Assembly: GCF_964188315.1 (NCBI RefSeq)
Contig: NC_135667.1
Location: 27,156,001-27,220,000 of the forward strand
From: Podarcis muralis
Lineage: Eukaryota
Length of the DNA stretch: 64,000 nt
Reading direction: 5' to 3'
In this document: positions 27,050 through 49,209 of the stretch, in pieces
Position numbering within the stretch: the first letter of the stretch is position 1
How the letters are laid out: each line of letters begins with the position of its first letter
The notes under the pieces: model-generated
Databases searched by the model: none
Told to the model about the DNA's origin: nothing
What the model saw: only the letters and a program-made list of their open reading frames with translations
Position numbers and translations under genes: made by a program

Positions 27050-28680
27050 CAAAATTTTATTAGTTTTCCACATTTATGACAAATATAACATATAAAACAC
27101 ACAAAACAAAACACATTAGAATACTAAAAAAAGGAAAAAAGGAAAAAACACATATTCTTTCTTATTTTCATTTCAATTTCCATTGTTAAATGACTTCCTC
27201 AAATCCCCCCAACTGAATTTCATTATATCACCTTGTAACAGTTCTCCCAAACATCTTTCTAGATAATTAGTTCCTTCAATTGACTATATTCAACTCTTTT
27301 CTTATTATCTTAATCCATATTACTATACGGATTCTTATTGTTATCCTAGGCCTGTTTAGTACTTTCAAGAACCTTCTCAATTATCTTATATTACAATATT
27401 ATAGTCTTTAACTTTCATCCAGTCTTCTTGGTATTCCTCCTCTTTCTGTTCACAAATTCTTCCACTCAGGTCAGCCAGCTCCAGAAATTCCAACATCTTC
27501 ATCTGCCGTTCTTCTACCGTTGGTTTTTCTTGAGATTTCCAAATTTTTGCTAATAGCAGTCTTGCCGCTGTAGTGGCATACAAAAATAACCTAACATCTT
27601 TTTTGGGCAATTCCAATCCTATTATTCCAAGTAAAAAGGCTTCTGGTTTCTTTACAAATGTATATTTCAACATTTTAAAAACTCATTCCCAGAAGTGCTT
27701 AGGACACGTCCACCACATATGGTGACAGGTGCCTTCCTTTTCTTTACACTTCCAGCATGAGTTATCATACGTATGATAAATCTTTGCTAGTTTTACCGGG
27801 GTTGAGTACCACCTATACATCATTTTCATAATATTTTCTTTTAGTACCGTACATGCCGTGAACTTAACCCCTTTCTTCCACAACCTTTCCCAATCTTCCA
27901 ACATTATATTGTATCCCATGTCTGTTGCCCAATCTATCATAACAGATTTGACTTGTTCATCCTTTGTATGCCACTCCAACAGCAAATTATACATTTTAGA
28001 TAGATTTTTAACATCCGTATCTAACAACTCTGTTTCCAATTTGGTTTTTTCCGTTGCAAAACCATTTTTCTTATCAAGCTTATACAACTCATTGATCTGG
28101 TAATATTGTAACCAACCATCCAGTTTATCTTTAATTTGATCAAATATTCTCAATTTAAATCCTTCATTATCTTCCAAAAATAAATCAGCATATTTCAACC
28201 ATTTAGTCTCCATATTTAGTTTTTTCTGGGCCTTAGCTTCCATTGGTGAAAGCCACCTGGGTGTTTTCCTTCCTAAGAGATCTTTATATCTTATCCAAAC
28301 ATTATATAGAGATTTTCTAATTACATGATTTTTAAAACCTTTGTGGGCCTTTATCTTGCCGTACCATAGACATGCATGCAAACCAAATACATTGTCAAAT
28401 CCCTCCAGATCCAGCATATTAACATTGTCTAATTGAATCCATTCCTTTATCCAGCAGAAAGCTTCAGCTTCAAAATATATCTTCAGGTCTGGCAGGGAGA
28501 ATCCCCCTCTTTCTTTAGTATCTGTTAGTAACATATTTAATTCTGGGTTTTTCCCCCTGCCAGATAAATTGAGACAATGCTTTCTGCCATTCTTTAAAAC
28601 ACTTAACATTATCAATAATTGGTATGGCTTGAAATAAGAACAACATCTTTGGCAATACATTCATCTTTACCACTGAAATT
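27050..28680 (-). mobile_element. 5'-truncated, frameshifted L1 (related subfamily)
   Basis: ORF fragments 27683..28660 and 27386..27673 align by eye with the L1 ORF2 C-terminal third (GGFSLPDLKIY, CWKC..HMWWTC); A-rich tail on the - strand. Confidence 0.9.
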
Positions 28681-29752: not shown

Positions 29753-30703
29753 TCATATGTTGCTGGCACATGGGAACCCAACAGTCTTTCTGATCACATC
29801 TCTAATTTCTTTGTTTCTCAGAGAATAGATGATGGGGTTGAAGAGAGGGATAAAAAAGGCGTAGATGACTGCAATGATCTTGTCATAACGTCCTGATCCC
29901 ATCCATGTCAAGTGCATGTACATGAAGCCAGTAGTTCCAAAGAAAGTAAGGACCACAATGAGGTGGGAGGCACAGGTGGAAAAAGCCTTCTGGCGCCCCT
30001 CCGAGCTATTGATCTTAACAATGACTTTCAGTATCTTCATGTATGAGAGGAGGATGAGAAAGATGAGGGCCAGGATGGCGATGGTGTGGAGGGCAAAATC
30101 CAACATGATGCTGGTCGATATGTCTGTGCAAGCAAGACTGATCACCTGGGGGAAGTCACAGAATATATGATCTATATGACTAGGCCCACAGAAGGGCAAC
30201 TTGGAAGTCAGAACAATCTCCGGCAAAGGACATGCAAAACCACACGCACAGCATCCCAGCACAAGCTGAATGCAAAGTTGGGGTGTCATCTTGGTCATAT
30301 AGTTTAACGGGGCACAGATGGCTAAGTACCGGCCGTAAGCCATCACTGCGAGCAAGCAGGCCTCTGAGATACCCACACTGTGGAAGAAATAGATTTGCAG
30401 AAGGCAGCTCCTGAAGGAAATGGACTTCTTGCTCCTCAGAAGGTCCACCAACACCCTGGGCATGGTAATGGTAGTATAGAACACCTCCAAGGTGGCCAAC
30501 ACAGCAATGAAGAAATACATGGGGATGTGAAGACGAGGAGTGGCAGAGATGAGGCTGAAGATGAGAGCATTGGCACTGAGGATGAGCAGGTAGATCACTA
30601 AGAAGATGGCAAAGAGAAGTATGCCGTAGTCGCCCAAGTTGAGGAACCCATCAAGCTCAAACTCAGACACTGAAGTGCCATTGATAGCTTCGTCCTGCAT
30701 CAT
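29753..30703 (-). CDS. olfactory receptor, family 6-like (OR6N/6K-type), 316 aa
   Basis: Single-exon 7TM ORF with PRLHIPMYFF, MAYGRYLAIC, KAFSTCASHL and PIIYSLRNKEI; splice acceptor 12 nt upstream of the ATG. Confidence 0.92.
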   Translation of the reverse strand: MMQDEAINGTSVSEFELDGFLNLGDYGILLFAIFLVIYLLILSANALIFSLISATPRLHIPMYFFIAVLATLEVFYTTITMPRVLVDLLRSKKSISFRSCLLQIYFFHSVGISEACLLAVMAYGRYLAICAPLNYMTKMTPQLCIQLVLGCCACGFACPLPEIVLTSKLPFCGPSHIDHIFCDFPQVISLACTDISTSIMLDFALHTIAILALIFLILLSYMKILKVIVKINSSEGRQKAFSTCASHLIVVLTFFGTTGFMYMHLTWMGSGRYDKIIAVIYAFFIPLFNPIIYSLRNKEIRDVIRKTVGFPCASNI

Positions 30704-32663: not shown

Positions 32664-34566
32664 GTCTCATCCATGAATTGCATCCCTTGAGGCATCCCAA
32701 AGTGATTTACAATGTTACAAAAACATGCATAAAATAATGTAAATATAAAATATTGTGTGTGTGGATAGATAGATAGATAATTAGGTAAGTTAAATATTTA
32801 AAACAGCAATAGGACATACGTAACATACCAATTACATCCAATACAGATACCAACATCGACAAACACCTTAATTTAGAAGACTTGTTGAAAGAAGAATATC
32901 TTTGGCTGGTGCCGAGAAAACAACAGTGATGGTGCCTCTCTGACATTTAATGGGAGTTCCAAGGAGTAGATGCTCCAATGGCAAAGGCTCAATTCTGATA
33001 TTATGCAGAAAGATCAGACAGTGCCTGCAGGATAACCTCTCCTGCAGAATGCAGTGATTTTGGTTTGGCATGTAGAGAACTGAGACAATCTTTTAGATGT
33101 ACCAATCCCCTCGTCCACAATGGGAAAATATAATTCATTCCAAGACTCCTGTGGGAATCCCTTGTTTATTATTACTCAGACTGTAGTTCTTCAGAACAAA
33201 ACTGTTTCCCCAGGAAATCAACATACCCTATTGAGTATAAATATAAATATCTCCTAAAGTCCAACTATACCTGGAGGATTTTTGACTGCAAGAAATTGGA
33301 TCCCGAAACTCTGGAGGCACCAAACATTAGGCTGACTCTTTTTCACACACCACAGGAGCCTCTGGGCTGCAATTCACACAACACACTCATCAGGGAGTAG
33401 TAATTCCCACTGAGTTTATTTGTGAGTAAATGCCCTGAAGAGTTCAGAGAAAAGAAATGCCACGGTGCACCTGTTGTCTCTCCCATATTGGTCTCTACAG
33501 CCACAGCTGGTGCTGTAACTCTCCAATGGTTTGTCTTTATTCCGGAAGGCACACTATTCACTTGTCTCCCAAGATGCCAACACAAAAATCCAGTTAGGAG
33601 TGGGCTGCCAATCACCTGAAAGGGAAGGAATGTCTCTCATCCGAAAAGGTTTGCTCTTATAATTAATGAGGGAGCTTTAAATATAGTCAATTTGGGTAGT
33701 TGTCATACACCTTACATGAAGGATGTTATTTAAAAAGCAAAGAAAGCAGGAAACAAATGAATAATCAAAACAAATCTCCCAAAAGAGTAATGTAAGCTAA
33801 TTTTTCCTACTCCACCCCTTCCAATAGATCAGCATCAACTTATGTCTGGGTGTTAAAAGCGATCCTCCTTTAACACACACACACTCTCTCTCTCTACATA
33901 ATTTTCATAACTTTCAGAAGCTTCCACCTTACTAAGCATTGTGGGTGGATATTCCATAACTAGACTGCTTCTCTTGAATACTCCCAGCAAAGATTCCACA
34001 CTTCCCTAGCCTTTTCGACTAGCATTGCTGTAATCCAAAAATATATCCTCATGTTGTTCATCAGAGACCCTTGTTTGGAGCTTCCAAGAAAGGGAAGAGG
34101 AAACTGTTGCCCCCCATAGGGCCAACTAGTCCTTATCATACAGCTAATCCAGCTGCCTTGAACTCATCCCACATTGCCATGCCTTCAACCAGTCCTGTTT
34201 CCTGCTAGGACTTGATGCTCAATTGAGTACCATAAGGGAGAACAGAAACGCCTTGTTTCAAAAACCCCACTGGCACCACTCAAAGCTTTGGTTATGACCC
34301 ACAAAGCTATACAGCTTGAGTTCAGGCTCTCTGAATGACCATCTCTCTCTCTATGATTCTGCTCGGCTTGGGGATATTCCAAGGAAGTCTTTCTCTCAGT
34401 CCCATCTCACTCACAGCTACTTTTGGTGAAGATAAGAGACAACCTTCTTGGTGGCTGCTCCCAGATTGTGGAACTACCTTCCAAGGGAGACTAGACTGGC
34501 CCTAGTCAGCTTCCCTGTCACCAGCAGGCACACTTTTTTTCCCTTCCGACAGGCCTTTTTCCTCGC

Positions 34567-34702
34567 CAGACTTCCTCAACCTCGGCCCTCCAGATGTTTT
34601 TGGCCTACAACTCCCATGATCCCTACCTAGCAGGACCAGTGGTCAGGGATGATGGGAACTGTAGTCTCAAAACATCTGGAGGGCCGAGTTTGAGGAAGCT
34701 TG
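34567..34702. mobile_element. hAT MITE (same family)
   Basis: Palindromic CCCTCCAGATGTT...AACATCTGGAGGG core. Confidence 0.75.
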
Positions 34703-34870
34703 TTCTTTGGCCACTAACTGGCTGTCATGGCAGGGTAGGTGTTGTTCTTTGTGTCTGCGTGTGTGTGCTTTTAAAATGATTTTCGGAGATTCTCAGTGCT
34801 GTATTTATCATAGCAACTATCAAAACAAATACATTATTTGTAATAATAAATAAAATATAAGCCAATCGTT

Positions 34871-35665
34871 TTTGTTGTTGTTTAGTCGTTTAGTCGTGTC
34901 CGACTCTTCGTGACCCCATGGACCAGAGCACGCCAGGCACTCCTGTCTTCCACCGCCTCCCGCAGTTTGGTCAGGCTCATGTTGGTAGCTTCAAGAACAC
35001 TATCCAACCATCTCATCCTCTGTCGTCCCCTTCTCCTTGTGCCCTCCATCTTTCCCAACATCAGGGTCTTTTCCAGGGAGTCTTCTCTTCTCATGAGGTG
35101 GCCAAAGTATTGGAGCCTCAACTTCACGATCTGTCCTTCCAGTGAGCACTCAGGTCTGATTTCCTTAAGAATGGATGCGTTTGATCTTCTTGCAGTCCAT
35201 GGGACTCTCAAGAGTCTCCTCCAGCACCATAATTCAAAAGCATCAATTCTTCGGCGATCAGCCTTCTTTATGGTCCAGCTCTCACTTCCATACATCACTA
35301 CTGGGAAAACCATGGCTTTAACTATACGGACCTTTGTTGGTAAGGTGATGTCTCTACTTTTTAAGATGTTGTCTAGATTTGCCATCGCCTTTCTCCCAAG
35401 GAGCAGGCGTCTTTTAATTTCGTGACTGCTGTCACCATCTGCAGTGATCATGGAGCCCAAGAAAATAAAATCTCTCACTGCCTCCATTTCTTCCCCTTCT
35501 ATTTGCCAGGAGGTGATGGGACCAGTGGCCATGATCTTCGTTTTTTTGATGTTGAGCTTCAGACCATATTTTGCGCTCTCCTCTTTCACCCTCATTAAAA
35601 GGTTCTTTAATTCCTCCTCACTTTCTGCCATCAAGGTTGTGTCATCTGCATATCTGAGGTTGTTG
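34871..35665 (-). mobile_element. RTE-BovB LINE, 5'-truncated
   Basis: NNLRYADDTTLMAESEEEL...WRALVHGVTKSRTRLND; (CAA)n tail; AAGCCAATC duplicated at 34859-34867 and 35666-35674. Confidence 0.95.
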
Positions 35666-36199
35666 AAGCCAATCATTAAAAACATTTTATATTTATAATT
35701 TAATATCTCTTCTTTGTTAGTCACCGTAATAAAAACAGGGTTTTAGTGATTTGGTATCTTATTACATTCCACAGAAAACTTGTCTGAAATGCTGTTTGAT
35801 GCTCCAGAACCTGTCTATTTGTACATACTTGTGTGGAATCTTGATTAAAATAAAAATGGGGGAAATAAACCGAAAGTTAACTTTCCTAAATATTTCTGTT
35901 GTTTTCTGCTCACCTGCAGCAACCTAACAGACAAGTAAATGGTGAAACAAGGTAAAGAAAACACCACTAGGCTACCCGCCTAGGTGGACCAGGGTGCCCT
36001 GTCCCCGCTAAAGACCTTCTGTGGGTTTTCACTTTGCTTCTCCATTTGAAGGAGGCTTGGTTCAGAAGAGCCAGGAATCTGCATTGCAAAAGTAAAGAAT
36101 AACAAATCGCTGGCCTAGATCATGTTTACATCTCTTGATGAGATTAGCTCGGCAAGCGGTTCAGAAGATCACAATCCAATTCGGGTACGAGGGTGACCG

Positions 36200-37170
36200 A
36201 AAAAGAAAAAGGACCCCCGGCAGCGACCCTAAGCAAGGGAGCATAAGGAGGAATCCCCACCCCACGCCCTCATTGAGCAAAGCCCGCAGATCGCAAAGCG
36301 GCGCCTTTCGGGAGAAGGGGGAGGGATCGCGCTTGCGCACTTCCCTCGGAACGCAGGTAAGGAAAGAGGGGATCTCCTGGAACCCGCGAATCCTTCGGCG
36401 GGATTAGGCGAAGGCGAGCCTTGGTTAGAGAGGAGCCCAAATTTCAAAGGTCCTCCGGAAGACCCGCCCTTCGCCGCGGCAGTCTGGGGCGTTGAGGAGG
36501 ATCCGCTGTGGTGCCTCTGTCTGGGGTTTTTTTGGGGGGGATGTCGCCATCCCGGGGTAAAGGGGTGCCTGCTGTCCGAAAGAGAAATGGATCCCGATAT
36601 TGGGGGATGATAGAAGCGGGGAGGGGGCGTGCCGGATCCTTGAAGCGATCCTTACCCAATGCATTAAAAAAGAAATAACTTTTGCAAGCGTTTGTTTGTG
36701 CAGACAAATGCTCCCTCTTTGGATCAGCAACAGCGATGGCAGACGCAGGCGGAAGAGCAATGCAGATTTGGAGGGAGGGAGTGGGGGGGGGTCAGGCAGC
36801 TGCCTCCCTCCCTCCAAGCCTAACAGTGAGTGTGGGGAGGGGAGGGGGGTCTGATCTCGATCTCTCTTTCTCCCGCCTCCCTTCCAATTTATTAGGATGG
36901 AGGAGAGTGGGAAGGTCAAGCCGCGGTTGCCACTGAACTGGGAAGAAAGTTGCCGCGCAGCAGCAGAAAAGGGCGCCTGGTCCGCCGGGGTAGCGCTGGT
37001 CCAAAGAGTCAAAATCCTGTGTTTTTGTATTTTTCTTATTTCCCCATAACAAACACACATACACAAATAAAAAAGGGCGTAGCCAGGATTTATTTAGGGG
37101 GGGTGGGCAGCGTTTATGTTGGGCGGAGGGGGCGGAACCAAGCTATTTGCGATGCAATTGGTCAGTTAAG
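36200..37170. promoter_or_regulatory. CpG-island promoter region
   Basis: CpG-dense non-repeat sequence. NRF1-like GCGCTTGCGCA at 36329-36339, ETS CACTTCC at 36338-36344, GC boxes at 37121-37136, CCAAT (ATTGG) at about 37157. + strand donors CAG|GTAAGG at 36357 and ACA|GTGAGT at 36826. Confidence 0.65.
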
Positions 37171-38417
37171 CACTGACCCCCACCCCCGATTACGCCCATG
37201 CACACAAACACAGTACTGGAACTTAGTATTGCTTCTTGATCACAAGACAGCAGGGGCTGAGGAGTCCCCCTCTGGGGACAGAATCAATTCCTCACCTTTC
37301 CCCTGGCAGCTCTTTAAACGGCCTAAGGTCCTGCCAGCACTGAGGGAGATTGTAGCCTACCCACCACCTGCCTTGACACACTCCTGGAGAAATAGGAAGG
37401 GGAAGCTCCCTGTTCCTTCTGGAATCATCACTTTATCCCCTGTTCCCTATACAGTGGTACCTCGGGTTACATATGCTTCAGGTTACATATGCTTCAGGTT
37501 ACAGACTCCGCTAAACCAAAAATAGTGCCTCGGGTTAAGAACTTTGCTTCAGGATGAGAACAGAAATCGTGCTCCGGCGTCAGCTGGAGGCCCCATTAGC
37601 TGAAGTGCCTCCAGACTCTCTGTGTGTCGCGGGAGGGATTCCTGCATAAATTTAGGTACGCTGTCCTGGTGCAAGAAATCCTGCTCAAAAATGAATAAAA
37701 ATGGATCTTCTGCGGTTAGGGACAATGTAATGCACTGAGAAGTGTGGGATGAGCAAATGATGAATGGGAAGGCATGTAAACACACTAGGAGTAAACAGGC
37801 ATGGGGCAAGAGTAGCTGGAAAATCAAACTGTGGAGAAGCAAACTGGTTTGTTTGATCAACTATGAGACAACTTGCGGTTTGTGAAACAAACCATGGCTT
37901 ACCATTAAGACAGACCAATATGCTCCTTTATAATGTGTTTTTGCTAACATTTTACCATATGTTGTCCACACCAGTGGGCACAGTAGGACAAGAAGTAGCC
38001 AGGTTTCACCTTGATATACCATTGCCCACATAATTTGTTTGTTTTACAGCAGAAGTGTGCAATTCTTAGACTCACAGAATTGTAGAGTTAAGTCATCTAG
38101 GACTCAGCTACATTAGTAAAAAAAAACTGCACTTTGAATGCGTTATAAACATGCAACACTAGATGGTGCTGCAAAATTATCTTCGCAATTTTCCATTGCG
38201 GGGTTCCCCCCCCTTTTGTTATAATGATTTAATTTCTGACTTATTTATTGCAGGGGTTTTCCCCCTTTGTGTAGATCCACCCCTATTCTAACCCGCTGCA
38301 ATGCAGGAATCTCAACTGAAGCATCCATGACAGAAGGTCACCCAACCTCTGCTCAAAAACCTCCTTTGTTCAACGTTGCTCCTGTGACTTCCAACACTGT
38401 TCCACTCCTTGCGCAGC

Positions 38418-39139
38418 ATGGAACCTCATGTGTTGCTCCAGCTGCTGAAGTTACACCTTGAGGTATTGGTTGCGGTGCTCCACTCAGCCATCAGCCGATG
38501 CAACGCCTATCTTATGAGTATCAGAAGGCGGCAGAGGAGGAGAGTGCTGATAGGGCGGGCGATTCAGAACCACATCTTGAGGACTAGGCGCATCATTCAG
38601 AGGAGGAGGAGCTGCAGACATATGGTTCCTATTGTCACCTTGTTGGAAAGCGGGCCAAAATTGCGGCGCTGGTGGGTCTGCCCCACCAAGCAGCATTGGT
38701 GGGAGCGTTCCATGTTGGGGACCCGGGACGACGAAACGTGGATCGAGAGCTTCCAGATGAGCCGAGGGACCCTCTTCGAAATTGCGGACGTCCTCCGACC
38801 CCAGCTCCAGAGGCAGAGAACTATCATGCGGGAAGCCATCCCCGTCGAGAAGCGGGTCGCTATCGCCGTGTGGTGGCTCTCTAATCTGAAGTGCTACCGC
38901 GAAGTTGCCGCGCAGTTTGGAGTCGGGAGGTCGACGGTGGGAGAGATCGTTCTGGAGGTGTGCTTTGCCATCAAGCACCTGCTCGTCCAGAAGACAATCT
39001 ATTTGGGCGACTACTGGAAGGTAAAGTTTTTTTAAAACGTGTTTTTAAAAAAGTTGCTGCAGTTGCACAGCTTCAAACTAACACCGCTGTGCCACACTGC
39101 TGCATTGTCTGGAGGGTGCGTGAGTGTGTTAAGTTGCAC

Positions 39140-39173
<34 letters not shown>

Positions 39174-39192
39174 GATAGATAGATAATTTTTC

Positions 39193-39231
<39 letters not shown>

Positions 39232-41218
39232 TTTTCTGTTTTACAATTTCAAATACTCATTTTACATCCTTAAGATATCAACGACTTCCCTTTTTCTCTT
39301 TCCATGCTTCATTTTACATATCTTAAATGTGTGGTGTAGTGGTTAAGAGCGGTAGTCACGTAATCTGGGGAACCGGGTTCGCGTCTCCGCTCCTCCACAT
39401 GCAGCTGCTGGGTGACCTTAGGCCAGTCACACTTCTCTGAAGTCTCTCAGCCCCACTCACCTCACAGAGTGTTTGTTGTGGGAGAGGAAGGGAAAGGAGA
39501 TTGTTAGCCACTTTGAGACTCCTGAAGGGGAGTGAAAGACGGGATATCAAATCCACTCTTCTTCTTCTTCCTTGCATACTTTAACAAAAACTACACCAAT
39601 CGGTATTCCATTACTTCATCCATCAAAACTTACTGTTGAACTTATCTTAACGCTGCCAGCGTTTTCAGCTATACTGTACACTATTATTTTCCATATATTC
39701 AATAAACTTTTTCCAATCTTCTTTAAACGTATGTTTATAGTTATAGGTAAAAAGTTGGACAGATGGCAAGAATAATATCGATAGCGTAAGAACATATGCT
39801 AATTGATATTATTCTTGCCATCTGTCCAACTTTTTACCTATAACTATATGGGGCAATTGCCATTGTATCTGTGGGCACTTATGGAGTAGTCAATGTAGCA
39901 AAATGTTGCTTTCTTTGACATTTTCATCCCACCTTCCCAGATATAAAATCTTCCTTAGGCAGCTTACTATCATCATCATCCCCACCTTTTCCTCAGACTG
40001 GGACTCAAGGCAGCTTACAGATAATATAGTTATACAGATAAAACTTCAATATACATTAATAAAATTAATGTAAGCATGAAAACATAACAGTTGCACAGTG
40101 TCAGAATACCACTTGCTGAAATCCTGTTGGTGACCTGCCATGTTTTATATTATGTGGAAGAGATTTCCCATACAAAACGACTGAATTGTTCGAAACTGCA
40201 TGGGTTGCTGAGGTGGGACGGAATAATTTGGGAACATGGGGCAGAAAGTCTCATATATTTGCATTGTAGTTTATATGGAATGTACCTGTTTCCTGAACAG
40301 TGTTTTTCTGTTTTGCACTTGCAATGCAAAATTAGTAAAAAAAGACTTACACAGCACAAAAATAACACAGCTTGCTACTATGCCATATTACTGTGACTTT
40401 TTTAGGACATCGTGGGTGTTCTGTGTGGACATTTTTGGGGTGAAATTGTTGGCACAACAACAAAACTACTGTTTTAAAATTTACTACTTCTTTGTTGCCG
40501 CTTACAGATCATGGATGGTTTCAGGAAGATGGGATTCCCTCACTGCGTTGGCGCGATGGACTTGACGCATCTGTCCATAATAGCTGCTACGGGTCCGGGA
40601 GACGAGTGCAACAAGCCAAAGAACTTCTGTTCCATTCTGCTTCAAGGGACAACCGACCACACTGGCCGTTTTACTAACATTGAAGTGGGATGGAGCGGGA
40701 AGAAACACGACGACGTGCAGATCTTCCGCAAATCTGCGCTGTGCCAGGCCATGGACGAGGGCACCTTTGTCCCGGGGAACCCAACTATCAACATGCAAGG
40801 TGTGGAGATCCCACCTCTGATACTTGCCCATAGCACCTACCCTATGCGGAAGTGGCTCATGAAGCCCTATGGAGGCCCCTTGGACCAGAGGAAGACCATC
40901 TACAATAGGACTTTCAACCACTGCCACAGCGTGGTCCAGCAGGCCTTTGGCAGGCTCAAGGCAAGGTGGCGTTGCCTCACGGCGAGGCTGCCAGTGGCAG
41001 AGGAGAACGTTTTGGCAGTGGTCACCGCGTGTGTCGTGCTGCACAATATTTGTGAGACCAAGGGGCACGTCGTTCCTGAAGGTGTGGACATCTCTGAGCA
41101 CGTACTGTTGGCAGCATATAACGAGGACTGCCATTCCTACGAAACCAGCAGTGAGTCGGGAGGCGAGGAGGTGCGCAATGCGATCTCACATTACCTGGCA
41201 GGAAATACTGAATGCTGA
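38418..41218 (+). CDS. PIF/Harbinger transposase-derived protein (HARBI1/ALP1-like fold), 2 coding exons, 437 aa, catalytic triad degenerate
   Basis: Exon 38418-39020 (strong Kozak agcATGG; SFQMSRGT, AIPVEKRVAIAVW, YREVAAQFGVGRSTV helix-turn-helix region) splices in phase 0 (TGGAAG|GTAAAG ... cttacAG|ATCATG) to 40508-41218 (GFPHCVGAMDLTH, GWSGKKHD, YPMRKWLMKPY, AFGRLKARWRCL, ACVVLHNICE). No stops or frameshifts. Confidence 0.88.
39140..39230. repeat. (GATA)n microsatellite
   Basis: Direct reading. Confidence 0.95.
39230..39735 (-). mobile_element. L1-type 3' fragment split by a SINE, inside the Harbinger-derived gene intron
   Basis: Similar to the 5500-5780 3'UTR; resumes after the SINE at about 39575. 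Confidence 0.7.
39329..39570 (+). mobile_element. tRNA-derived SINE (Squam1-like); second copy at 55159-55410
   Basis: GTGTGGTGTAGTGGTTAAGAG head; shared body; (CTT)n / (CTC)n tail. Confidence 0.8.
39736..39848. repeat. perfect 44-bp inverted repeat with a 25-nt spacer
   Basis: 39736-39779 is the exact reverse complement of 39805-39848. Confidence 0.95.
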
Positions 41219-41527
41219 GATCTGGACTTTGCATTTCAGTGTGTTTTGCATTTATTTTGTAAATATAATTGCCTTGGTTACACTCACGCGTTTCATTTGT
41301 GTGTACGCCATCTACACTCGTTGAGTAAAGCTCAGGTTAATGAAGCCAGATCCCCTTCCCTTCATTCCTAAAATTCCATATTTTGCATTTTTCTGTTTTT
41401 AAAAAATCATTACAGTTCATACCATTTGCACAACTTGAATTAACATGTTGCTGCCATAAAGATGAATGTTAAGTGCACATACAACCTGCTTCGCCCCCAC
41501 CCTAAAACTCGTAATACTACCTCCCCA

Positions 41528-42439
41528 ATGGAACCTATGACACAGGCACTGCTTAAAATAAATCAATCCCTTGAGGCCTTAACAAAGCAATCAGCAGAAA
41601 ATTCAAAGAAATTGACAGAACTTACAGCAAGATTGGATTTGAATACCACATCAGTGGCAACAAATACAGAATCTATAAATAGACTGATTCAGGAATCTTC
41701 AGAAACAAGGAAAATTGCAGAGAGTGCAAAATCTGTCGCAGGTGAGACACAGGAAAGACTTGTGCCGATTGAGAAAAAGGTGAATGAGCATGAAGCGGCC
41801 CTCTCCTTACTGGAATTACAACGGAAAGAACGAAATCTGAAATTTAGACAGGTTCCAGAGAAAGAAGAGGACAATCTGGCGGAATTTCTCACAGAGGCAA
41901 TTCTGGAAAATTGGCAAGGAGATCTGGAGGAAGATGAAGTGGGGATAACAACTGCTTTCAGACTTGGTAGAAAGCAAAGCAAGAAGTCAAGGGATTGTCT
42001 GATCACCTTTAGAACCAAAGAGGAAAGAGACAAGATACTGAACCTTCACTATCAAAAAGCTTTGGTGATTGGAAACATTCAAGTCCAAATCTTTAAGGAC
42101 ATCCCTAAATACATCTTGGAAGTGAGGACTTTTTATAGAGATCTTGCCAATTTGCTGAGGAAGAACTTCATACCCTTCAGGTGGGAATTCCCACAGGGGT
42201 TGTCCTTTAACTACAAAGGGAGGAAAGTAAGAATAAGAACAGTACAGGAGAAAGAGTACTTTTTGGAGAGAAACCTAGAGGACCTACAGAAAGGTACGGT
42301 GGATCCGGGAAGAGAAGGACAAGGATTAACATCAGAAGGAGGAGGGCTAACGGACATTGCAAATCTATCATTTGGACTACCACAACTGCCAACTGAAGAG
42401 GAAGAAAAACTTGGAGCAGTCGGAGGATCAAACATCTAA
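41528..42439 (+). CDS. L1 ORF1p (coiled-coil + RRM + CTD), 303 aa from the first ATG inside the element
   Basis: Heptad-like N-terminus; RKERNLKFRQVPE, AFRLG, LITF and QIFKDIP motifs typical of L1 ORF1. Confidence 0.85.
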   Translation: MEPMTQALLKINQSLEALTKQSAENSKKLTELTARLDLNTTSVATNTESINRLIQESSETRKIAESAKSVAGETQERLVPIEKKVNEHEAALSLLELQRKERNLKFRQVPEKEEDNLAEFLTEAILENWQGDLEEDEVGITTAFRLGRKQSKKSRDCLITFRTKEERDKILNLHYQKALVIGNIQVQIFKDIPKYILEVRTFYRDLANLLRKNFIPFRWEFPQGLSFNYKGRKVRIRTVQEKEYFLERNLEDLQKGTVDPGREGQGLTSEGGGLTDIANLSFGLPQLPTEEEEKLGAVGGSNI

Positions 42440-42447
42440 CAAACAAA

Positions 42448-45400
42448 ATGTCTCTGCAACTTCTAAGCTGGAATTGCAACGGTTTGAACCATCCCAGAAA
42501 AAAACGACAGGTTTTCCACATTTTGAAAAGGGAACAACTGGATCTGATATGTCTATAGGAAACTCACATAACTAGAGCACACAGGAAATTGTTGGTGAAC
42601 AAAAGACTGGGACAAGAATTTATATCTTCCGATAAAGTAAAAAAGAGAGGAGTAGTGATTTATGCAAAGGAAAAATTGGACCCAAAGCTAAAATTTAAGG
42701 ATGAAGAAGGAAGATACCTGGCAATTGAAGTACAGATCCAGGGGGAAAAATATTTGATAATTGGAGTATATGCACCAAATGATGGGAAGGCAGAATTTTT
42801 TAAGAAGTTGCATGAGACCTTACTAGATTATCTCGACTGCAAAATAATAATGATGGGGGACATGAATGGAGTGGTTTCTACAAATATGGACAAGGCACAA
42901 AGACAGACAATATCTAAAGAAGGAAGATTACCAAAGACTTTCTTCGAGATGACGGAAAATATGGACTTGATTGATATCTGGAGAACAAAGAATCCTCTCG
43001 AGAGAGAGGGAACTTTTTTCTCGGAATCTAAAATGACATGGACGAGAATCGACCAAATCTGGGTATCTAGTGTGATGGCTACAAAGATTAAAAAAGTAGA
43101 AATCTGCCCAAAAACCTGCTCCGACCATAATGCCGTAAAGATGGAAATGAAAATGACAACAACTGGATCCTTTAGATGGAGAATGAATGACTCCCTATTT
43201 AGAGATGAACAATTCTGTATAAAGGCCCTAAAGACATTGAAAGATTACTTCGAGATAAATTTGAGAACAGATGTGGAAAAAAGAACAATTTGGGACGCAA
43301 GTAAAGCCGTGATGAGAGGCTTCCTGATACAACAGAATTCAATCAAGAGGAAAAAGCAAAATGAAAGGAAAGAAAGAATTTTAGAAAAAATGAAGGAAGG
43401 AGAAAAGAAACTGAGGTCAAAACCAAAGTCTCAAGAAATTTTGAGAGAAATAAAATATTATCAGACGCAATATATGGAACTGACAAATCAAGAGATAGAA
43501 TGGAAAATTAAACAAATGAGACAAAGGACTTTTGAGTCTGCAGATAAGTGTGGGAAGCTCCTTGCATGGCAATTGAAAAAGAGACAAAAATTGAACACAG
43601 TTACTTGTTTGGAGATAGAGGGAAAGAATGTTCATAAGCCAAATGAGATAAGTAACTGTTTCCAAAGTTTTTTTAGGAAATTATACACACAAGGGCCAGT
43701 AAATGAACAAGAAATAGAAGAATTTCTTAAAAATTATGGACTACCGAAAATTCCAGAACAGGGCAAGTTGATTTTGAATGAGAAAATAACAGAACAGGAA
43801 ATAGAGGAGGCCATTCAAAAGGCACAACTGGGAAAGTCTCCAGGACCAGACGGACTGACGGCTAGATATTATAAAGCTTTGAGAGAAGGTTTAGTGCAAC
43901 CACTAAAAGAAGTTTGCAATGAAATATTGGAGGGGAAAAAGGCACCTGAAACGTGGAAAGAGGCTTTTATCTCACTTATACCAAAGACCGAGACTGAAAA
44001 GACCCAGGTTAAGAACTACCGCCCGATATCATTATTAAATGTGGATTACAAAATTTTTGCAGACATTTTAGCAAAAAGACTGAAGAAAGTATTGACAGGT
44101 GAGATTCATAAGGATCAATCTGGCTTTCTCCCGGGTAGACACATGTCTGACAATGTGAGGAACATAATAGACATTGTGGAATTGTTGGAAATGAACATTA
44201 ACAGAAAAGCGGCTTTGATTTTTGTGGACGCGGAGAAAGCCTTTGACAATATTTGTTGGAGTTTTATGAAAAAGAATCTCCAAGGGATGGGGGTAGGCCA
44301 AGGTTTTGAAAATGGTATAGGTGCAATCTATTCTGAGCAGAAGGCAAAGCTAATTGTGAACAATGTGGTAACAGAAGAGATAGCCATAGAGAAAGGAACA
44401 CGACAGGGATGTCCTATTTCCCCCCTACTTTTTATACTGGTTCTGGAGGTTTTGTTAAATATGATTAGAAAGGACCAGTTGGTTAAAGGAATTCAGGTCG
44501 GAGTGAAAGAGTATAAATTAAGGGCATTTGCAGATGACCTAGTTTTGACTTTGCAACAGCCAATCACTAGCACAAAAAGAGTTTTAGAACTGATCGAGAT
44601 ATTTGGTCAAGTTGCAGGATTTAAGCTGAACAAACAAAAAACTAAAGTTTTGGAAAAAAACCTAACAAATGAAGAAAAAGAGACATTCCAGAATGAAACT
44701 GGTTTGGAGATAGCAAAAAAAGTGAAGTACCTGGGGGTGAATTTGACATCGAAAAATGTGAATCTTTTTAAAGACAATTATGATAAATGTTGGACAGAAG
44801 TTAAGAAAGATTTAGACATATGGTCAAGGCTGAAACTTTCCTTGTTAGGCAGAATTGCTGTTATCAAAATGAATGTATTGCCTAGAATGTTATTTCTGTT
44901 TCAGACATTACAAATAATAGACAAGATGGACTGTTTCAAGAGGTGGCAGAAAGACATATCGAAATTTGTTTGGCAGGGCAAAAAGCCAAGAATAAAATTT
45001 AAGACATTAACAGATGCGAAAGATAGAGGGGGTTTTGCCCTGCCGGACTTAAGACTCTACTATGAATCAGCAGCGTTTTGCTGGTTGAAAGATTGGCTGC
45101 TCCTCGAGAATACAGACATTTTGGACCTTGAAGGATTTGACAACAGATTTGGTTGGCATGCATATATATGGTATGACAAGGTAAAATTGCATAAAGGTTT
45201 TAAGAACCATATGGTGAGGAAAGCTCTGTATAATGTTTGGATTAAGTATAAAGACCTGTTTGAAAGTAAAACCCCCAGGTGGTTGTCACCAATGGAAGCA
45301 AAAGAGGTGAAAAAATTGAATATGGGTTCTAATTGGCCTAAATATTGTGAAATTATAGAACAAGATGGTGAAAATGTAAAATTGCAGAGTTTTGAGAAAC

Positions 45401-46182
45401 TGAAATTTAAGGTGAGAGATTGGTTACATTATCGACAGATAAATGAAGTATTTAAACAGGACAGAAAGAAAGGCTTCCAGGTGGAGAAGTCAAAATTAGA
45501 AACAGAACTGTTAGAACCCAATACTAAAAATTTGTCAAGAATGTACAACTTGCTGTTGAAATGGAATACTCAAGATGAAATGGTGAAATCTAATATGATT
45601 AAATGGGCACAGGACATTGGGCATGACATTGAATTTGCAGACTGGGAGCAGTTATGGACCACTGGTGTTAAATTTACGGCATGCAATGCCTTAAAAGAAA
45701 ACATTATGAAAATGATCTACAGGTGGTACATGACTCCTGCTAAGTTAGCAAAGATCTATCATTTGCCCAATAACAAGTGTTGGAAGTGCAGTGAAACGGA
45801 GGGAACCTTCTATCACCTTTGGTGGACCTGCCCGAAGATTAAGGCTTTCTGGGAAATGATCTATAATGAAATAAAAAAAGTTCTGAAGAGAACGTTTGTT
45901 AAAAAACCAGAGGCCTTTCTCTTGGGTATGGTGGGCCAAATGGTGCCAAAGAAGGATAGGACATTTTTTATGTACGCCACCACAGCAGCAAGAATTCTTC
46001 TAGCAAAGTATTGGAAGACGCAAGATTTACCCACATTGGAAGAATGGCAGACGAAGGTGATCGACTATATGGGACTGGCAGAGATGACTGGCAGAATTCG
46101 AGACCGGGGGAAAGAGGCGGTGGATGAAGACTGGAACAAATTCAAAGTTTATCTTAAAAACTGTTGTAATTTGGAAAATTAG
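42448..46182 (+). pseudogene. L1 ORF2p (endonuclease-reverse transcriptase), 1244 codons with one premature stop (Q37*)
   Basis: ATG at 42448 (MSLQLLSWNCNGLN); TAG at 42556-42558 in CL*ETH (expected LQETH); otherwise open to 46182. Confidence 0.92.
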
Positions 46183-46930
46183 GGGCTCAGAGTTATAAGA
46201 GATAAAGAACTACAGTTGTATTAATAATTAACTGAAGTTAAATACATGAAATATACTTAAGTTATGATCAGAGGGTTGCTAAAAAATCTTGAAACAAGAA
46301 TGCAGGAAAGGGGTGGTATGGGGAAGTCATGTTTTTGTTTGTTTATGTCTATGTTTTTGTTTTGTTTATTCTTTATTTATGGAAAACTAATAAAAATTTA
46401 TTATAAAAAAAAAAAAAACTCGTAATACTACCTCCCCACAATAGCAAGACATCTGCCCCCAGATGTACAAACAAACAACAACAGCTTCCCTGTGAAAAAA
46501 TAACAGACAAGTTAACGAAGGTATTGAAACACACTGCCCCTTCCTCCTGCTCTAGGGAAGGGCTCTGATTAAGCCATCTCCTCTGACCCCTTAGCACCAT
46601 GGTGACTGAAACACAACCAGCTGGAGGAAGGAGAGGAGTTGCTTTAATTCCGCACTCCAAATCACAGTTTTTAAGGCGAATGATTCCTTAGAATGTAGCC
46701 CTCTTTAGGTGCTAATGGTCCATGGAATGACTCACTCAGGATAGCTCTGTGAGCGTAATGGTAGTGTGGGGATTGGAACTCGGGTTTCTCTGGTCCAAGT
46801 ACCACACACTGGCTAGCCATGCATTTGTTTTCCGTTTAATCAAGCAATCTAAAGACTTGAGGGGGAAAAGGCAGGTTCTTGAATTCCAAAGTTGGGTATG
46901 TGAGGGGTGAGACAACCCAAAACCTAATTA

Positions 46931-48117: not shown

Positions 48118-49053
48118 CTAGAAAGAGGACGGTGTCTTGGGGTGCAGTAAACGCCTCATGGCATCCTTCACTTCTTTGTTCCTCAGGCAATATATGATAG
48201 GGTTGAGCATTGGTGTCACAACATTGTAGAGCACAGTTGCCAAGGTGTCAAAATATACAGAACGGCTGGCACTGGGCCTGTTGTAATTGAACATGCAGGT
48301 GACATAGAATAAAGTGACCACCGTGAGGTGCGAAGTGCAGGTGGAGAATGCCTTGCGGCGGCCTCGGTTGGTACGGATTCTCAAGATGGCCGCCACGATG
48401 TGGACGTAGGAAACCACGATGCAAAGGAAAGGACTGACGCCGAGCAGCAGGGTGACTGCCAGCAAGGTGATTTGGTTGGGGAATGTGTCCGCGCAAGACA
48501 GCTTGAGTAGCTGGGGGACGTCACAGAACAAATGGTCCAGGTTGTGAGAGGCACAGAAGGGCAGGAGAGCGGTCATGGCCGTGTGCAGGACTGAATTGAG
48601 GAAGCCGCAGGCCCAGGAGGCTGCCACCAGCCGGGTACACAGCTTCCTGTTCATGAAGATGGTGTACGTAAGTGGGTGGCAGATGGCGACGTATCGGTCA
48701 TACGCCATCACAGCCAGTAGGAGGCACTCAACCCCTACAAAAGTCACCAAGAAGTAAAGCTGAGCCAGGCAGCCCAGGATAGAGATGGTCTTTGTCTCCG
48801 TCAACAGATTCTTGAGCATGTGGGGCAGAGTGACGGAGGAATAGCAAATGTCCAGGAACGACAGGTGCTGGATGAAATAGTACATGGGCGTACGAAGGCC
48901 AGAATCTAGCCCTGCGGTCACCAGGATAAGAGCATTGCCCAGCAAGGTGGTGATGTACATGGTCAGAAACAGGAGGAAGAACAGGGCTTGGGGCTCTGGG
49001 AAGCTGGAGAAGCCCAGGAACACAAATGATGTTGTCGCGGTTTGGTTTCCCAT
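48118..49053 (-). CDS. olfactory receptor (class II, OR5V-like), 311 aa from the ATG at 49053
   Basis: LRTPMYYF, MAYDRYVAICHPL, KAFSTCTSHL, PMLNPIIYCLRN; N-glycosylation sequon NQT; acceptor about 20 nt upstream. Confidence 0.93.
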   Translation of the reverse strand: MGNQTATTSFVFLGFSSFPEPQALFFLLFLTMYITTLLGNALILVTAGLDSGLRTPMYYFIQHLSFLDICYSSVTLPHMLKNLLTETKTISILGCLAQLYFLVTFVGVECLLLAVMAYDRYVAICHPLTYTIFMNRKLCTRLVAASWACGFLNSVLHTAMTALLPFCASHNLDHLFCDVPQLLKLSCADTFPNQITLLAVTLLLGVSPFLCIVVSYVHIVAAILRIRTNRGRRKAFSTCTSHLTVVTLFYVTCMFNYNRPSASRSVYFDTLATVLYNVVTPMLNPIIYCLRNKEVKDAMRRLLHPKTPSSF

Positions 49054-49209
49054 CTGCCTCACCTCCTGTACCTGAAACGTGGGAGAGATTTAGAAGACCA
49101 AACCCATAACTGAAAATCATGCTTATTCCCAGCACACACAAAGTCCCATTCACTTGGTTGTATTTATTTCATCTGTGATCTCCCAAGCACACCATGAGTT
49201 ACAGCAAGA

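What the first reader, a model, noticed from the sequence alone, without database searches (positions are those of the whole stretch)
38418..41218. Candidate domesticated, catalytically dead Harbinger-transposase gene inside an OR cluster
Seen: a 437-aa ORF in two exons, split by a 1487-bp GT-AG phase-0 intron, with a strong Kozak start and no stop or frameshift. The N-terminal HTH-like region and the Harbinger motifs are retained. The triad reads D219 (GAMDLTH), H309 (ILAHSTYP, normally LGD.AYP) and Q345 (VVQQAFG, normally VVE.AFG), with the exact DD35E spacing. The YxNRKG motif is also altered (CNKPKN). The intron has accumulated an L1 fragment, a SINE nested in that L1, and a GATA microsatellite. 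I found no TIRs and no Myb/SANT partner ORF. Known: Harbinger transposases have been domesticated repeatedly (vertebrate HARBI1 with NAIF1; plant ALP1 and HDP1, chromatin regulators acting with Myb-like partners). Inference: an old, immobile locus that lost catalysis but kept its frame suggests a reptile-lineage host gene acting as a scaffold or chromatin factor, or as a dominant-negative transposase inhibitor.
Basis: partly seen in the sequence, partly recalled or inferred. Interest (0 to 1): 0.85.

Follow-up and report, generated by a model that had tools for sequence, protein, structure and literature searches.

The report
Tamed Harbinger transposase gene, KRAB-less
This is a real, expressed wall-lizard gene made from a Harbinger "jumping gene" enzyme that has lost its cutting residues, and it is the lacertid version, lacking the KRAB repressor domain, of a transposase-derived gene family (KHARBID1) already catalogued in snakes and other lizards.

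Summary
Exons 38418-39020 and 40508-41218 (+), joined across a 1487-bp GT..AG intron, encode 437 aa identical to the annotated protein LOC114582510 of Podarcis muralis. RNA contigs from three studies, stranded raw reads and a second species all show that splice.

Exon 2 is a Pfam DDE_Tnp_4 (PIF/Harbinger) domain. The triad reads D219-H309-Q345, where 114, 125 and 120 of 137 relatives have D, D and E.

It is a host gene, not a transposon copy:
- I found one copy, with no TIRs.
- 437-aa orthologues sit next to the same olfactory-receptor gene in Zootoca, Lacerta and the amphisbaenian Rhineura.
- dN/dS is 0.02-0.07.

The lacertoid genes have no KRAB exon and lie at a different locus. Every lineage has lost a different triad residue while the rest stays conserved.

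Most likely it is a non-catalytic nuclear DNA- or partner-binding regulator; that function is inferred, not shown. It is a new member of a known kind, of moderate interest.

The scan earlier noted a different Harbinger-derived gene pair elsewhere in this genome (s1-179013), not this gene.

The parts
38299..38417 (+). Minimum 5' UTR. RNA contigs start at 38299-38305, where a repeat breaks the assembly, so the true transcription start is unknown. A short upstream ORF (ORF listing start 38267; an ATG near 38327, by my count from the ruler; runs to 38461) overlaps the main ATG in another frame.
38368..38417 (+). Relic of formerly coding sequence just upstream of the ATG. It is homologous at DNA level to the coding 5' part of the same exon in python and Pogona KHARBID1. 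A 5-nt indel shared with Rhineura, plus stops, close the frame.
38418..39020 (+). Exon 1 CDS, residues 1-201. It holds a long N-terminal helix with an arginine-rich stretch (3-66), a linker, and the helix-turn-helix region (about 94-200), which is the most conserved part (56% of columns invariant in 10 orthologues).
39021..40507 (.). Phase-0 GT..AG intron, 1487 bp. Its position is conserved in Rhineura (509 bp there), in toxicoferan KHARBID1 and in paralogues. It contains a GATA microsatellite (about 39142-39235), a repeat split by a SINE (39329-39572, absent from the Zootoca and Lacerta introns), and a 47-nt near-perfect palindrome (39736-39848).
40508..41218 (+). Exon 2 CDS, residues 202-437 plus stop. 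It holds the DDE_Tnp_4 RNase-H-like core (strands and helices 214-386) and a C-terminal helix (414-434).
40559..40561 (+). Codon of D219, the first triad position. D is retained here; the column is D in 114 of 137 homologues.
40829..40831 (+). Codon of H309, the second triad position. The column is D in 125 of 137 homologues. It is H in all five lacertids and D in Rhineura.
40937..40939 (+). Codon of Q345, the third triad position. The column is E in 120 of 137 homologues. It is Q in lacertids and Rhineura.
41219..41308 (+). 3' UTR as far as the RNA contigs of the same species reach (41282-41308). The second species' contig reaches 41384.
48118..49062 (-). Downstream olfactory-receptor gene that anchors synteny. 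Its orthologue sits in the same place and orientation in Zootoca (96% aa), Lacerta (97%) and Rhineura (85%).

Best explanation
This is a single-copy, immobile host gene derived from a PIF/Harbinger transposase. It is the lacertoid member of the clade that holds the squamate KRAB-Harbinger fusion gene KHARBID1.

In lacertids and amphisbaenians the protein starts at a Met that is internal, or replaced, in the toxicoferan fusion proteins. It has no KRAB domain and lies in an olfactory-receptor cluster rather than next to SCAN/zinc-finger genes.

Two of its three metal-binding residues are replaced (D-H-Q), so it almost certainly does not cut DNA. All other parts are kept under very strong purifying selection: the N-terminal arginine-rich helix, the helix-turn-helix region, the RNase-H-like core and the C-terminal helix.

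Inferred mechanism, not shown: a nuclear, non-catalytic DNA- and/or partner-binding protein. It would work like other dead Harbinger transposases (ALP1 in PRC2, HDP1) and like the HARBI1-NAIF1 pairing, probably with a Myb/SANT-type partner encoded elsewhere in the genome. Unlike its toxicoferan relatives, it would not recruit co-repressors through KRAB.

I lean about 2:1 towards secondary loss of KRAB, through relocation of the last two exons, over KRAB never having been present.
For: Shown:
- Exact match to an annotated 437-aa protein.
- GT..AG splice in contigs of three studies, in stranded raw reads (first mates only on the minus strand) and in a second species.
- DDE_Tnp_4 domain.
- Triad columns D/D/E in the family against D/H/Q here.
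- AF2 model at pLDDT 86.8. It matches the ALP1 and ALP1-like models (TM 0.66-0.72) and HARBI1 (TM by hit 0.75-0.79, 20-21% identity).
- No TIRs. No second copy in the window. Only one P. muralis protein among the listed hits.
- Orthologues of 437 aa at 99-100% identity in four other lacertids and 92% in Rhineura.
- The same intron position and the same downstream OR gene in those species.
- dN/dS 0.016-0.05 among lacertids and 0.05-0.07 against Rhineura, while dS (0.11-0.13) matches intron divergence of about 9-14% over most aligned blocks.
- 16 of the 19 CDS differences I tabulated from the listed differences in the RNA runs are synonymous.
- Careful tree: a 12-row clade (100/99) in which Lacertoidea (100/100) is sister to the toxicoferan KRAB forms, mirroring the species tree.
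- Pogona 110070590 and Anolis 103280956 in that clade are the reference genes of KHARBID1 (Toxicofera, 170-200 My, KRAB, dN/dS 0.08) in Cosby et al., supplementary file 6.

Bearing on KRAB loss:
- DNA upstream of the ATG is still alignable to the toxicoferan coding exon.
- Rhineura keeps the splice acceptor.
- Salvator's annotated protein reads through this stretch with residual similarity to the Pogona linker.
- Rhineura shows that segmental duplication moves this gene: a copy within a segment of at least 8.7 kb, now carrying a stop at codon 127.
Against: - No functional data of any kind. DNA binding, partners, localisation and phenotype are all inferred.
- Locus-level orthology between the lacertoid and toxicoferan genes is not supported. 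The python, boa and monitor loci share SCAN-ZNF and a gene of about 1150-1170 aa as neighbours, and show no OR within 10 kb. The window shares nothing with those flanks except a retroelement fragment.
- The direction of KRAB change cannot be polarised. Unfused paralogues also start at the homologous Met, so the lacertoid form could be the ancestral unfused state.
- His and Gln can in principle contact metals or DNA, so residual or altered chemistry is not formally excluded.
- No Myb-type partner lies in the window.
Confidence: 0.8

Rival explanations
1. Independent domestication. A transposon of the same Harbinger lineage was fixed separately in the lacertoid stem (in an OR cluster, never fused to KRAB) and in the toxicoferan stem (captured by KRAB exons in a zinc-finger region). 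On this reading the window gene is a sister of KHARBID1, not its orthologue.
For: The neighbourhoods differ, with no shared flanking genes. The inferred common ancestor still had all three triad residues, because each is retained in some lineage. Unfused paralogues start at the same Met. Cosby et al. score the squamate KRAB-Harbinger fusions as separate capture events.
Against: Two sister clades each mirroring the species tree with short stems (0.15 and 0.07) fit a single vertically inherited gene at least as well. No transposon-like copies fall inside the clade among annotated proteins. The stretch upstream of the ATG is conserved about as well as coding sequence, and the Salvator protein reads through it.
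Confidence: 0.2
2. Dominant-negative inhibitor. The dead transposase persists because it poisons transpososomes of active Harbinger elements, acting as a host defence.
For: The catalytic residues are lost while the dimerisation-like helices and the core fold are retained. Harbinger elements have been active in squamates (titles and abstracts listed).
Against: 92% protein identity between lacertids and an amphisbaenian, with dN/dS 0.02-0.07 spread evenly over all domains, is the signature of a stable housekeeping-type interaction and not of an arms race. I saw no sign in the protein hits of related active elements in lacertids.
Confidence: 0.08
3. Still an enzyme. The D-H-Q pocket supports some nuclease or other metal-dependent activity.
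For: D219 and the surrounding fold are conserved, and His can bind metals.
Against: The three positions are freely replaced by different residues in each lineage (H, N or T at the second position; Q, T, G or K at the third; G at the first in Anolis) while the rest of the protein is constrained. That pattern indicates these positions are no longer needed. The nearby NRK motif and the Gly after the first Asp are also changed.
Confidence: 0.03
4. A decaying transposon copy whose open frame is chance.
For: It sits among retroelements, with an L1 directly downstream.
Against: Orthologues at the same site with intact frames, dN/dS 0.02-0.07, and spliced mRNA.
Confidence: 0.01

Closest known systems
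KHARBID1, the KRAB-PIF/Harbinger host-transposase fusion gene of Toxicofera (Cosby et al., 'Recurrent evolution of vertebrate transcription factors by transposase capture', preprint 10.1101/2020.05.07.082677, supplementary file 6)
   Same: Same gene-tree clade (100/99). It aligns over the full 437 aa at 56-66% identity, including the N-terminal helix, the HTH region and the core. The intron position is the same. Purifying selection is strong in both (0.08 reported there, 0.02-0.07 here). The triad is incomplete in every member examined.
   Different: No KRAB exon within the 64-kb window or within 10 kb upstream in Rhineura, Zootoca and Lacerta. Translation starts at a Met internal to the toxicoferan protein. 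The genomic neighbourhood differs: OR cluster against SCAN-ZNF and a gene of about 1150-1170 aa. The published age (Toxicofera) does not include Lacertoidea.
Arabidopsis ALP1 and ALP1-like, dead Harbinger transposases; ALP1 is an accessory subunit of PRC2 (PMC4671723, PMC7282668)
   Same: Best structural matches (TM 0.66-0.72, 22-25% identity). Both are single- or low-copy immobile genes with one or two triad residues replaced: DGA in ALP1, DHQ here.
   Different: An independent domestication in plants. PRC2 association is not testable here. ALP1 works with the Myb-derived ALP2, and no such partner is identified for this gene.
Vertebrate HARBI1, which partners with the Myb-like NAIF1
   Same: Same fold (TM by hit 0.75-0.79; rmsd 3.1-3.8 A over about 335 residues for five of the six orthologues). 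Both are domesticated Harbinger transposases without TIRs.
   Different: Only 20-21% identity, so a separate and much older domestication (teleosts to mammals, as summarised in PMC9710019). From my own knowledge, not tested here, HARBI1 retains its DDE triad. It lacks the long N-terminal arginine-rich helix.
Insect PIF-like domesticated genes (DPLG, APLG, LPLG, BPLG), with or without a co-domesticated MADF partner (PMC9710019)
   Same: The criteria met are the same: synteny across distant species, purifying selection and loss of transposon hallmarks. 'Transposase-only' domestications exist there too.
   Different: Unrelated events in insects. Here the relatives are KRAB or SCAN fusions.

Membership tests
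PIF/Harbinger transposase (active element) | DDE_Tnp_4 catalytic-domain homology | tested here: met
   Pfam PF13359, E 2e-21, 76.7 bits against a cutoff of 24.8. 8225 homologues at E <= 0.001.
PIF/Harbinger transposase (active element) | Intact D-D-E metal-binding triad | tested here: not met
   D219-H309-Q345, where 114, 125 and 120 of 137 homologues have D, D and E.
PIF/Harbinger transposase (active element) | Terminal inverted repeats with 3-bp (TWA) target duplications, and a second Myb-like ORF in the element | tested here: not met
   No credible flanking inverted repeats in 34000-45000. No Myb-like match near the gene.
PIF/Harbinger transposase (active element) | Multiple dispersed copies | tested here: not met
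   No second copy in the window. One P. muralis protein among the listed hits. The whole genome was not scanned at DNA level.
KHARBID1 (Cosby et al.) | Groups with the reference genes Pogona 110070590 and Anolis 103280956, to the exclusion of other squamate Harbinger-derived genes | tested here: met
   12-row clade at 99 (quick tree) and 100/99 (careful tree), with topology mirroring the species tree. Identifiers matched.
KHARBID1 (Cosby et al.) | N-terminal KRAB domain spliced to the transposase exons | tested here: not met
   tblastn with seven KRAB-linker N-termini gives nothing below E 0.28 in the window and nothing below 0.008 in the Rhineura, Zootoca and Lacerta loci. The positive controls reach 1e-14 to 1e-36. 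Pfam finds no KRAB in P0165, P0225 or P0166. The frame upstream of the ATG is closed.
KHARBID1 (Cosby et al.) | Same genomic locus as the toxicoferan gene | tested here: not met
   Toxicoferan neighbours are SCAN-ZNF and a gene of about 1150-1170 aa. Lacertoid neighbours are OR genes. No shared flanking genes within the sequence available. Only 10 kb of flank could be read.
KHARBID1 (Cosby et al.) | Purifying selection and expression | tested here: met
   dN/dS 0.016-0.073. Spliced RNA in four runs.
HARBI1 | Orthology to vertebrate HARBI1 | tested here: not met
   Only 20-21% identity in structural alignment. The nearest relatives are squamate-specific genes and reptile Harbinger copies. The NCBI names 'putative nuclease HARBI1' on relatives are automatic.
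ALP1-type non-catalytic Harbinger protein in a chromatin complex | Loss of triad residues in a conserved, immobile, low-copy gene | tested here: met
   ALP1 has DGA in place of DDE.
ALP1-type non-catalytic Harbinger protein in a chromatin complex | Physical association with a chromatin complex and/or a Myb-type partner | not testable with these tools
   Needs IP-MS or a two-hybrid screen in lizard cells.

The most novel reading that the evidence does not exclude
The lacertoid gene preserves, or has returned to, a stand-alone state of KHARBID1, and in that state it is held under even tighter constraint than the KRAB fusion. That would mean the dead Harbinger core has an important KRAB-independent cellular role. 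It would also mean either that domestication of the transposase preceded KRAB capture (fusion as a later add-on, not the birth event) or that evolution has run a natural 'KRAB deletion' of a host-transposase fusion gene without loss of function.
Probability: 0.3. Interest if true: 0.6.

Novelty: new member of a known kind. Interest (0 to 1): 0.4.

Why it matters
Host-transposase fusion genes are thought to be born when host exons such as KRAB splice onto a transposase, and to act as repressors that bind transposon-derived sites. Here the same transposase-derived gene exists without KRAB in one large lizard lineage. It has been kept almost unchanged (92% identity between wall lizards and a worm lizard), while each lineage has lost a different catalytic residue.

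This has three consequences. It pushes the origin of the KHARBID1 transposase module back at least to the common ancestor of Lacertoidea and Toxicofera. It shows that the conserved function needs neither catalysis nor, in lacertoids, KRAB. And it offers a natural contrast (with KRAB against without) for testing what the Harbinger core and its HTH region actually do.

It does not reveal a new kind of system.

Tried and rejected
- PDB sequence search with exon 2: no hit at E <= 1. Foldseek against PDB gave only weak integrase and Mos1 matches, with no E <= 0.001. No solved Harbinger-type structure is available for comparison.
- Inverted-repeat search for TIRs: only short, low-identity pairs.
- Search for a Myb-like partner in the window, using ORFs of the Elgaria Myb gene region: only short multi-copy repeat hits.
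- Search for KRAB exons in the window and in the lacertoid loci: negative.
- Attempt to polarise KRAB gain or loss from the N-terminal linkers of KRAB-bearing paralogues: only the KRAB A and B boxes align and the linkers are not comparable, so this was inconclusive.
- Shared flanking genes between the toxicoferan loci and the window: only a retroelement fragment.
- Exact look-ups failed for Elgaria P0170 and Anolis sagrei P0176. Salvator's locus could not be fetched because the protein is held only in UniRef.
- The earlier-findings index had nothing at this place.
- Rfam on 36000-41500: only sub-threshold miRNA-like hits on the intronic palindrome.
- Elgaria P0002, the second-ranked hit (Pogona P0001 ranked first), looked like a candidate orthologue. 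It turned out to be a paralogue lying directly downstream of a Myb_DNA-bind_4 gene.
Full report
**1. What is in the sequence**

The ATG at 38418 lies in a strong context (A at -3, G at +4), and an in-frame stop sits 12 codons upstream. An open frame runs to 39020, followed by GTAAAG. After TTACAG the frame resumes at 40508 and ends with TGA at 41216-41218.

The two pieces are each 100% identical to the two halves of P0165. That protein is XP_028559424.2, 'uncharacterized protein LOC114582510 [Podarcis muralis]', 437 aa, formerly named 'protein ALP1-like' by NCBI.

Exon 2 matches Pfam DDE_Tnp_4 (E 2e-21, 76.7 bits, cutoff 24.8) and Plant_tran.

**2. Is it transcribed and spliced?**

Yes. Reads and contigs laid on 36000-41450 show a joint that skips 1487 bases with GT..AG ends at 39020|40508. 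Four sources show it:
- a 1490-nt contig (2017 study);
- a 1523-nt contig (2025 study);
- a 1068-nt contig from a second, closely related species;
- 5 raw stranded reads from 4 start points, in a 2026 run.

In the stranded run all exon reads have the first mate on the minus strand, as expected for an mRNA from the plus strand. The contigs run from about 38299-38305 to 41282-41308. The 5' limit coincides with a repeat, so it is not a mapped transcription start.

**3. The catalytic residues**

I aligned P0165 with 137 diverse homologues from a full-library HMMER search (8225 hits at E <= 0.001). The columns of residues 219, 309 and 345 are D in 114, D in 125 and E in 120 of them. The window protein has D, H and Q.

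Two neighbouring hallmarks are also changed: the Gly after the first Asp (G in 104 of 137, L here) and the N-R-K motif (K-P-K here). Thirty-five residues separate positions 309 and 345.

The AF2 model (pLDDT 86.8, pTM 0.76) has four parts:
- a 64-residue N-terminal helix whose second half is arginine-rich;
- a helical HTH-type region (94-193);
- an RNase-H-like core (214-386);
- a C-terminal helix.

Foldseek matches the Arabidopsis ALP1-like and ALP1 models (TM 0.66-0.72) and HARBI1 (TM by hit 0.75-0.79, 20-21% identity), followed by IS5-family transposases. No solved structure is close.

**4. Transposon copy or host gene?**

- No credible TIRs flank it.
- There is no second copy in the window.
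- P0165 is the only P. muralis protein among the listed hits of two searches of a 5.8-billion-protein collection.
- Its 90% cluster holds 437-aa proteins from Podarcis raffonei, P. lilfordi, Lacerta agilis and Zootoca vivipara (99-100% identity) and from the amphisbaenian Rhineura floridana (92%).
- The fetched loci show gap-free exons, the same phase-0 intron site (509 bp in Rhineura, 1422-1487 bp in lacertids), and the same olfactory-receptor gene downstream on the opposite strand. That OR is 85% identical at protein level in Rhineura and 96-97% in Zootoca and Lacerta.
- Pairwise dN/dS is 0.016-0.05 among lacertids (dS 0.11-0.14) and 0.05-0.07 between lacertids and Rhineura (dS 0.56-0.82).
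- Most aligned intron blocks between Podarcis and Zootoca or Lacerta are 86-91% identical with many gaps, so dS is about the neutral rate.
- All five protein regions are constrained, with omega from 0 to 0.15. The HTH region is the most conserved across ten clade members (56% invariant columns).
- Of the 19 CDS differences I tabulated from those listed in the RNA runs, 16 are synonymous.
- A second Rhineura copy lies in a segmental duplication of at least 8.7 kb at another locus. It has a stop at codon 127 and dN/dS 0.33-0.49 against its parent, so it is decaying.

This is a domesticated gene under strong selection.

**5. What it is related to**

The next-best relatives align over the full 437 aa:

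| Species | Length | Identity | KRAB |
|---|---|---|---|
| Salvator (Teiidae) | 484 aa | 70% | no |
| Varanus | partial | 66% | yes (full 909-aa form) |
| Elgaria | 585 aa | 63% | yes |
| Liasis | 591 aa | 62% | yes |
| Candoia | 560 aa | 62% | yes |
| Pogona | 613 aa | 59% | yes |
| Anolis (two species) | 610-660 aa | 56% | yes |

Quick and careful maximum-likelihood trees give one clade of 12 (99; 100/99). In it (Salvator,(Rhineura, lacertids)) (100/100) is sister to the toxicoferan KRAB forms (94/93). The internal order is snakes, then Anguimorpha plus Iguania, which is the species tree.

The Pogona gene (GeneID 110070590) and the Anolis gene (103280956) are the reference members of KHARBID1 in the supplementary table of Cosby et al. 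That entry reads: Toxicofera, 170-200 My, PIF/Harbinger, KRAB, fusion only, dN/dS 0.08. The same table lists further squamate Harbinger fusions: KHARBID2, KHARBID3 and HARBID-G2. The window gene is therefore the lacertoid member of the KHARBID1 clade, a lineage that the table does not include.

**6. The KRAB question**

tblastn with seven toxicoferan KRAB-linker N-termini finds the KRAB exons in python and Pogona (E 1e-14 to 1e-36). It finds nothing in the 64-kb window or in the 10 kb upstream of the Rhineura, Zootoca and Lacerta genes. Pfam sees no KRAB in the Podarcis, Rhineura or Salvator proteins.

The roughly 50 bases before the lacertoid ATG still align with the coding 5' part of the same exon in python and Pogona. 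Rhineura keeps the polypyrimidine-ACAG acceptor at the homologous place. A 5-nt indel shared by lacertids and Rhineura, plus stops, closes the old frame. Salvator's annotated protein reads through this stretch and retains similarity to the Pogona linker.

This favours secondary truncation. However, unfused paralogues also start at the homologous Met, and the linkers of other KRAB-bearing paralogues are not comparable. The polarity is therefore not settled.

The loci differ as well. In Liasis and Candoia the gene lies between a SCAN-ZNF gene and a gene of about 1170 aa. Varanus has the same kind of downstream neighbour (1148 aa). No OR lies within 10 kb in any of them. Nothing but a retroelement fragment is shared with the window.

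Two readings remain. Either the last two exons were relocated, as in the Rhineura segmental duplication, or related elements were fixed independently in the two lineages.

**7. The triad across the clade**

| Lineage | Triad |
|---|---|
| Lacertids | D-H-Q |
| Rhineura | D-D-Q |
| Salvator | D-N-T |
| Elgaria, Varanus, Pogona | D-D-G |
| Liasis | D-T-E |
| Candoia | D-T-K |
| Anolis | G-D-E |

Each acidic residue survives somewhere, so the common ancestor probably had all three. They were then lost piecemeal in at least six events while the surrounding protein stayed constrained. Catalysis is evidently not the selected function. The same pattern was described for the plant ALP1 clades.

**8. 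How it most likely works (inferred)**

I infer a nuclear, non-catalytic protein that binds DNA through the conserved HTH region, or binds partners, or both. It would resemble ALP1 in PRC2 and the HARBI1-NAIF1 pairing (PMC4671723; PMC9710019). In Toxicofera the KRAB domain would add co-repressor recruitment, following Cosby et al.'s model for KRAB-transposase fusions. In lacertoids that arm is absent.

The arginine-rich N-terminal helix may supply nuclear import or self-association, which is speculation from the sequence and the AF2 model. No Myb-type partner is in the window. Earlier notes of this scan (s1-179013, s1-193680) report Harbinger-type Myb genes elsewhere in this genome, and I did not test them.

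**9. Verdict**

The gene is annotated, and its clade is catalogued as KHARBID1 in a supplementary table. Three points appear not to have been described:
- the KRAB-less lacertoid form;
- its presence outside Toxicofera;
- the lineage-by-lineage erosion of the triad.

A literature search by gene identifiers found nothing. It is a new member of a known kind, of moderate interest.

Noticed in passing
window 41528-46417 (+): Full-length L1 with both reading frames open: the ORF1 frame listed from 41462, and ORF2 of 1197 aa at 42589-46182 with RVT_1 and endonuclease hits. It has an A-rich tail and a target duplication of about 20 bp. It is inserted about 310 bp after the gene's stop codon. The site is empty in Zootoca and Lacerta, so this is a young and possibly still active element. 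A second 325-aa ORF of the same length lies at 27683-28660 (-).
   Followed up: partly
window 39736-39848: A 47-nt, 98%-complementary palindrome inside the intron, conserved in the Zootoca and Lacerta introns. It scores below threshold for Rfam MIR6135 (71 bits against 99) on both strands. It looks like a MITE or hairpin. No small-RNA evidence was examined.
   Followed up: partly
window 37450-37610: A very abundant repeat in all RNA runs (word depth 80,000-200,000). Many 'opposite strands' joints at 37469/37572-37607 suggest snap-back or inverted copies. Its identity was not determined.
   Followed up: no
window 38267-38461 (+): An upstream ORF with an ATG near 38327 overlaps the main start codon in another frame. 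It could dampen translation of the main ORF.
   Followed up: no
window 29753-30703, 48118-49062, 53851-54786, 59341-60276 (all -): Four intact olfactory-receptor genes (7tm_4, E 1e-54 to 1e-56). The genes at 53851 and 59341 both match one Zootoca and one Lacerta gene at 94-95%, so they are a recent tandem duplicate in the Podarcis lineage.
   Followed up: partly
L005 9593-11424 (Rhineura floridana, second locus): A duplicate of the gene inside a segmental duplication of at least 8.7 kb (about 91% identity), lying between Ras-like and TPT genes. It has a premature stop at codon 127 and is annotated as a 301-aa protein. It is a young pseudogene in the making.
   Followed up: yes
L004 2103-12115 (Elgaria multicarinata): The paralogue P0002 (449 aa, first triad residue G) lies 290 bp downstream of a 515-aa Myb_DNA-bind_4 gene on the same strand. 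This is the classic two-gene Harbinger layout kept as host genes, possibly the counterpart of the pair noted in this genome as s1-179013.
   Followed up: no
window 62727-63995 (-) and 34882-35724 (-): A Ty1/copia-type polymerase fragment (RVT_2 and SH3_retrovirus hits) at the window's end, and an RVT_1 fragment upstream of the gene. The latter is the only sequence shared with the Pogona KHARBID1 flank.
   Followed up: no
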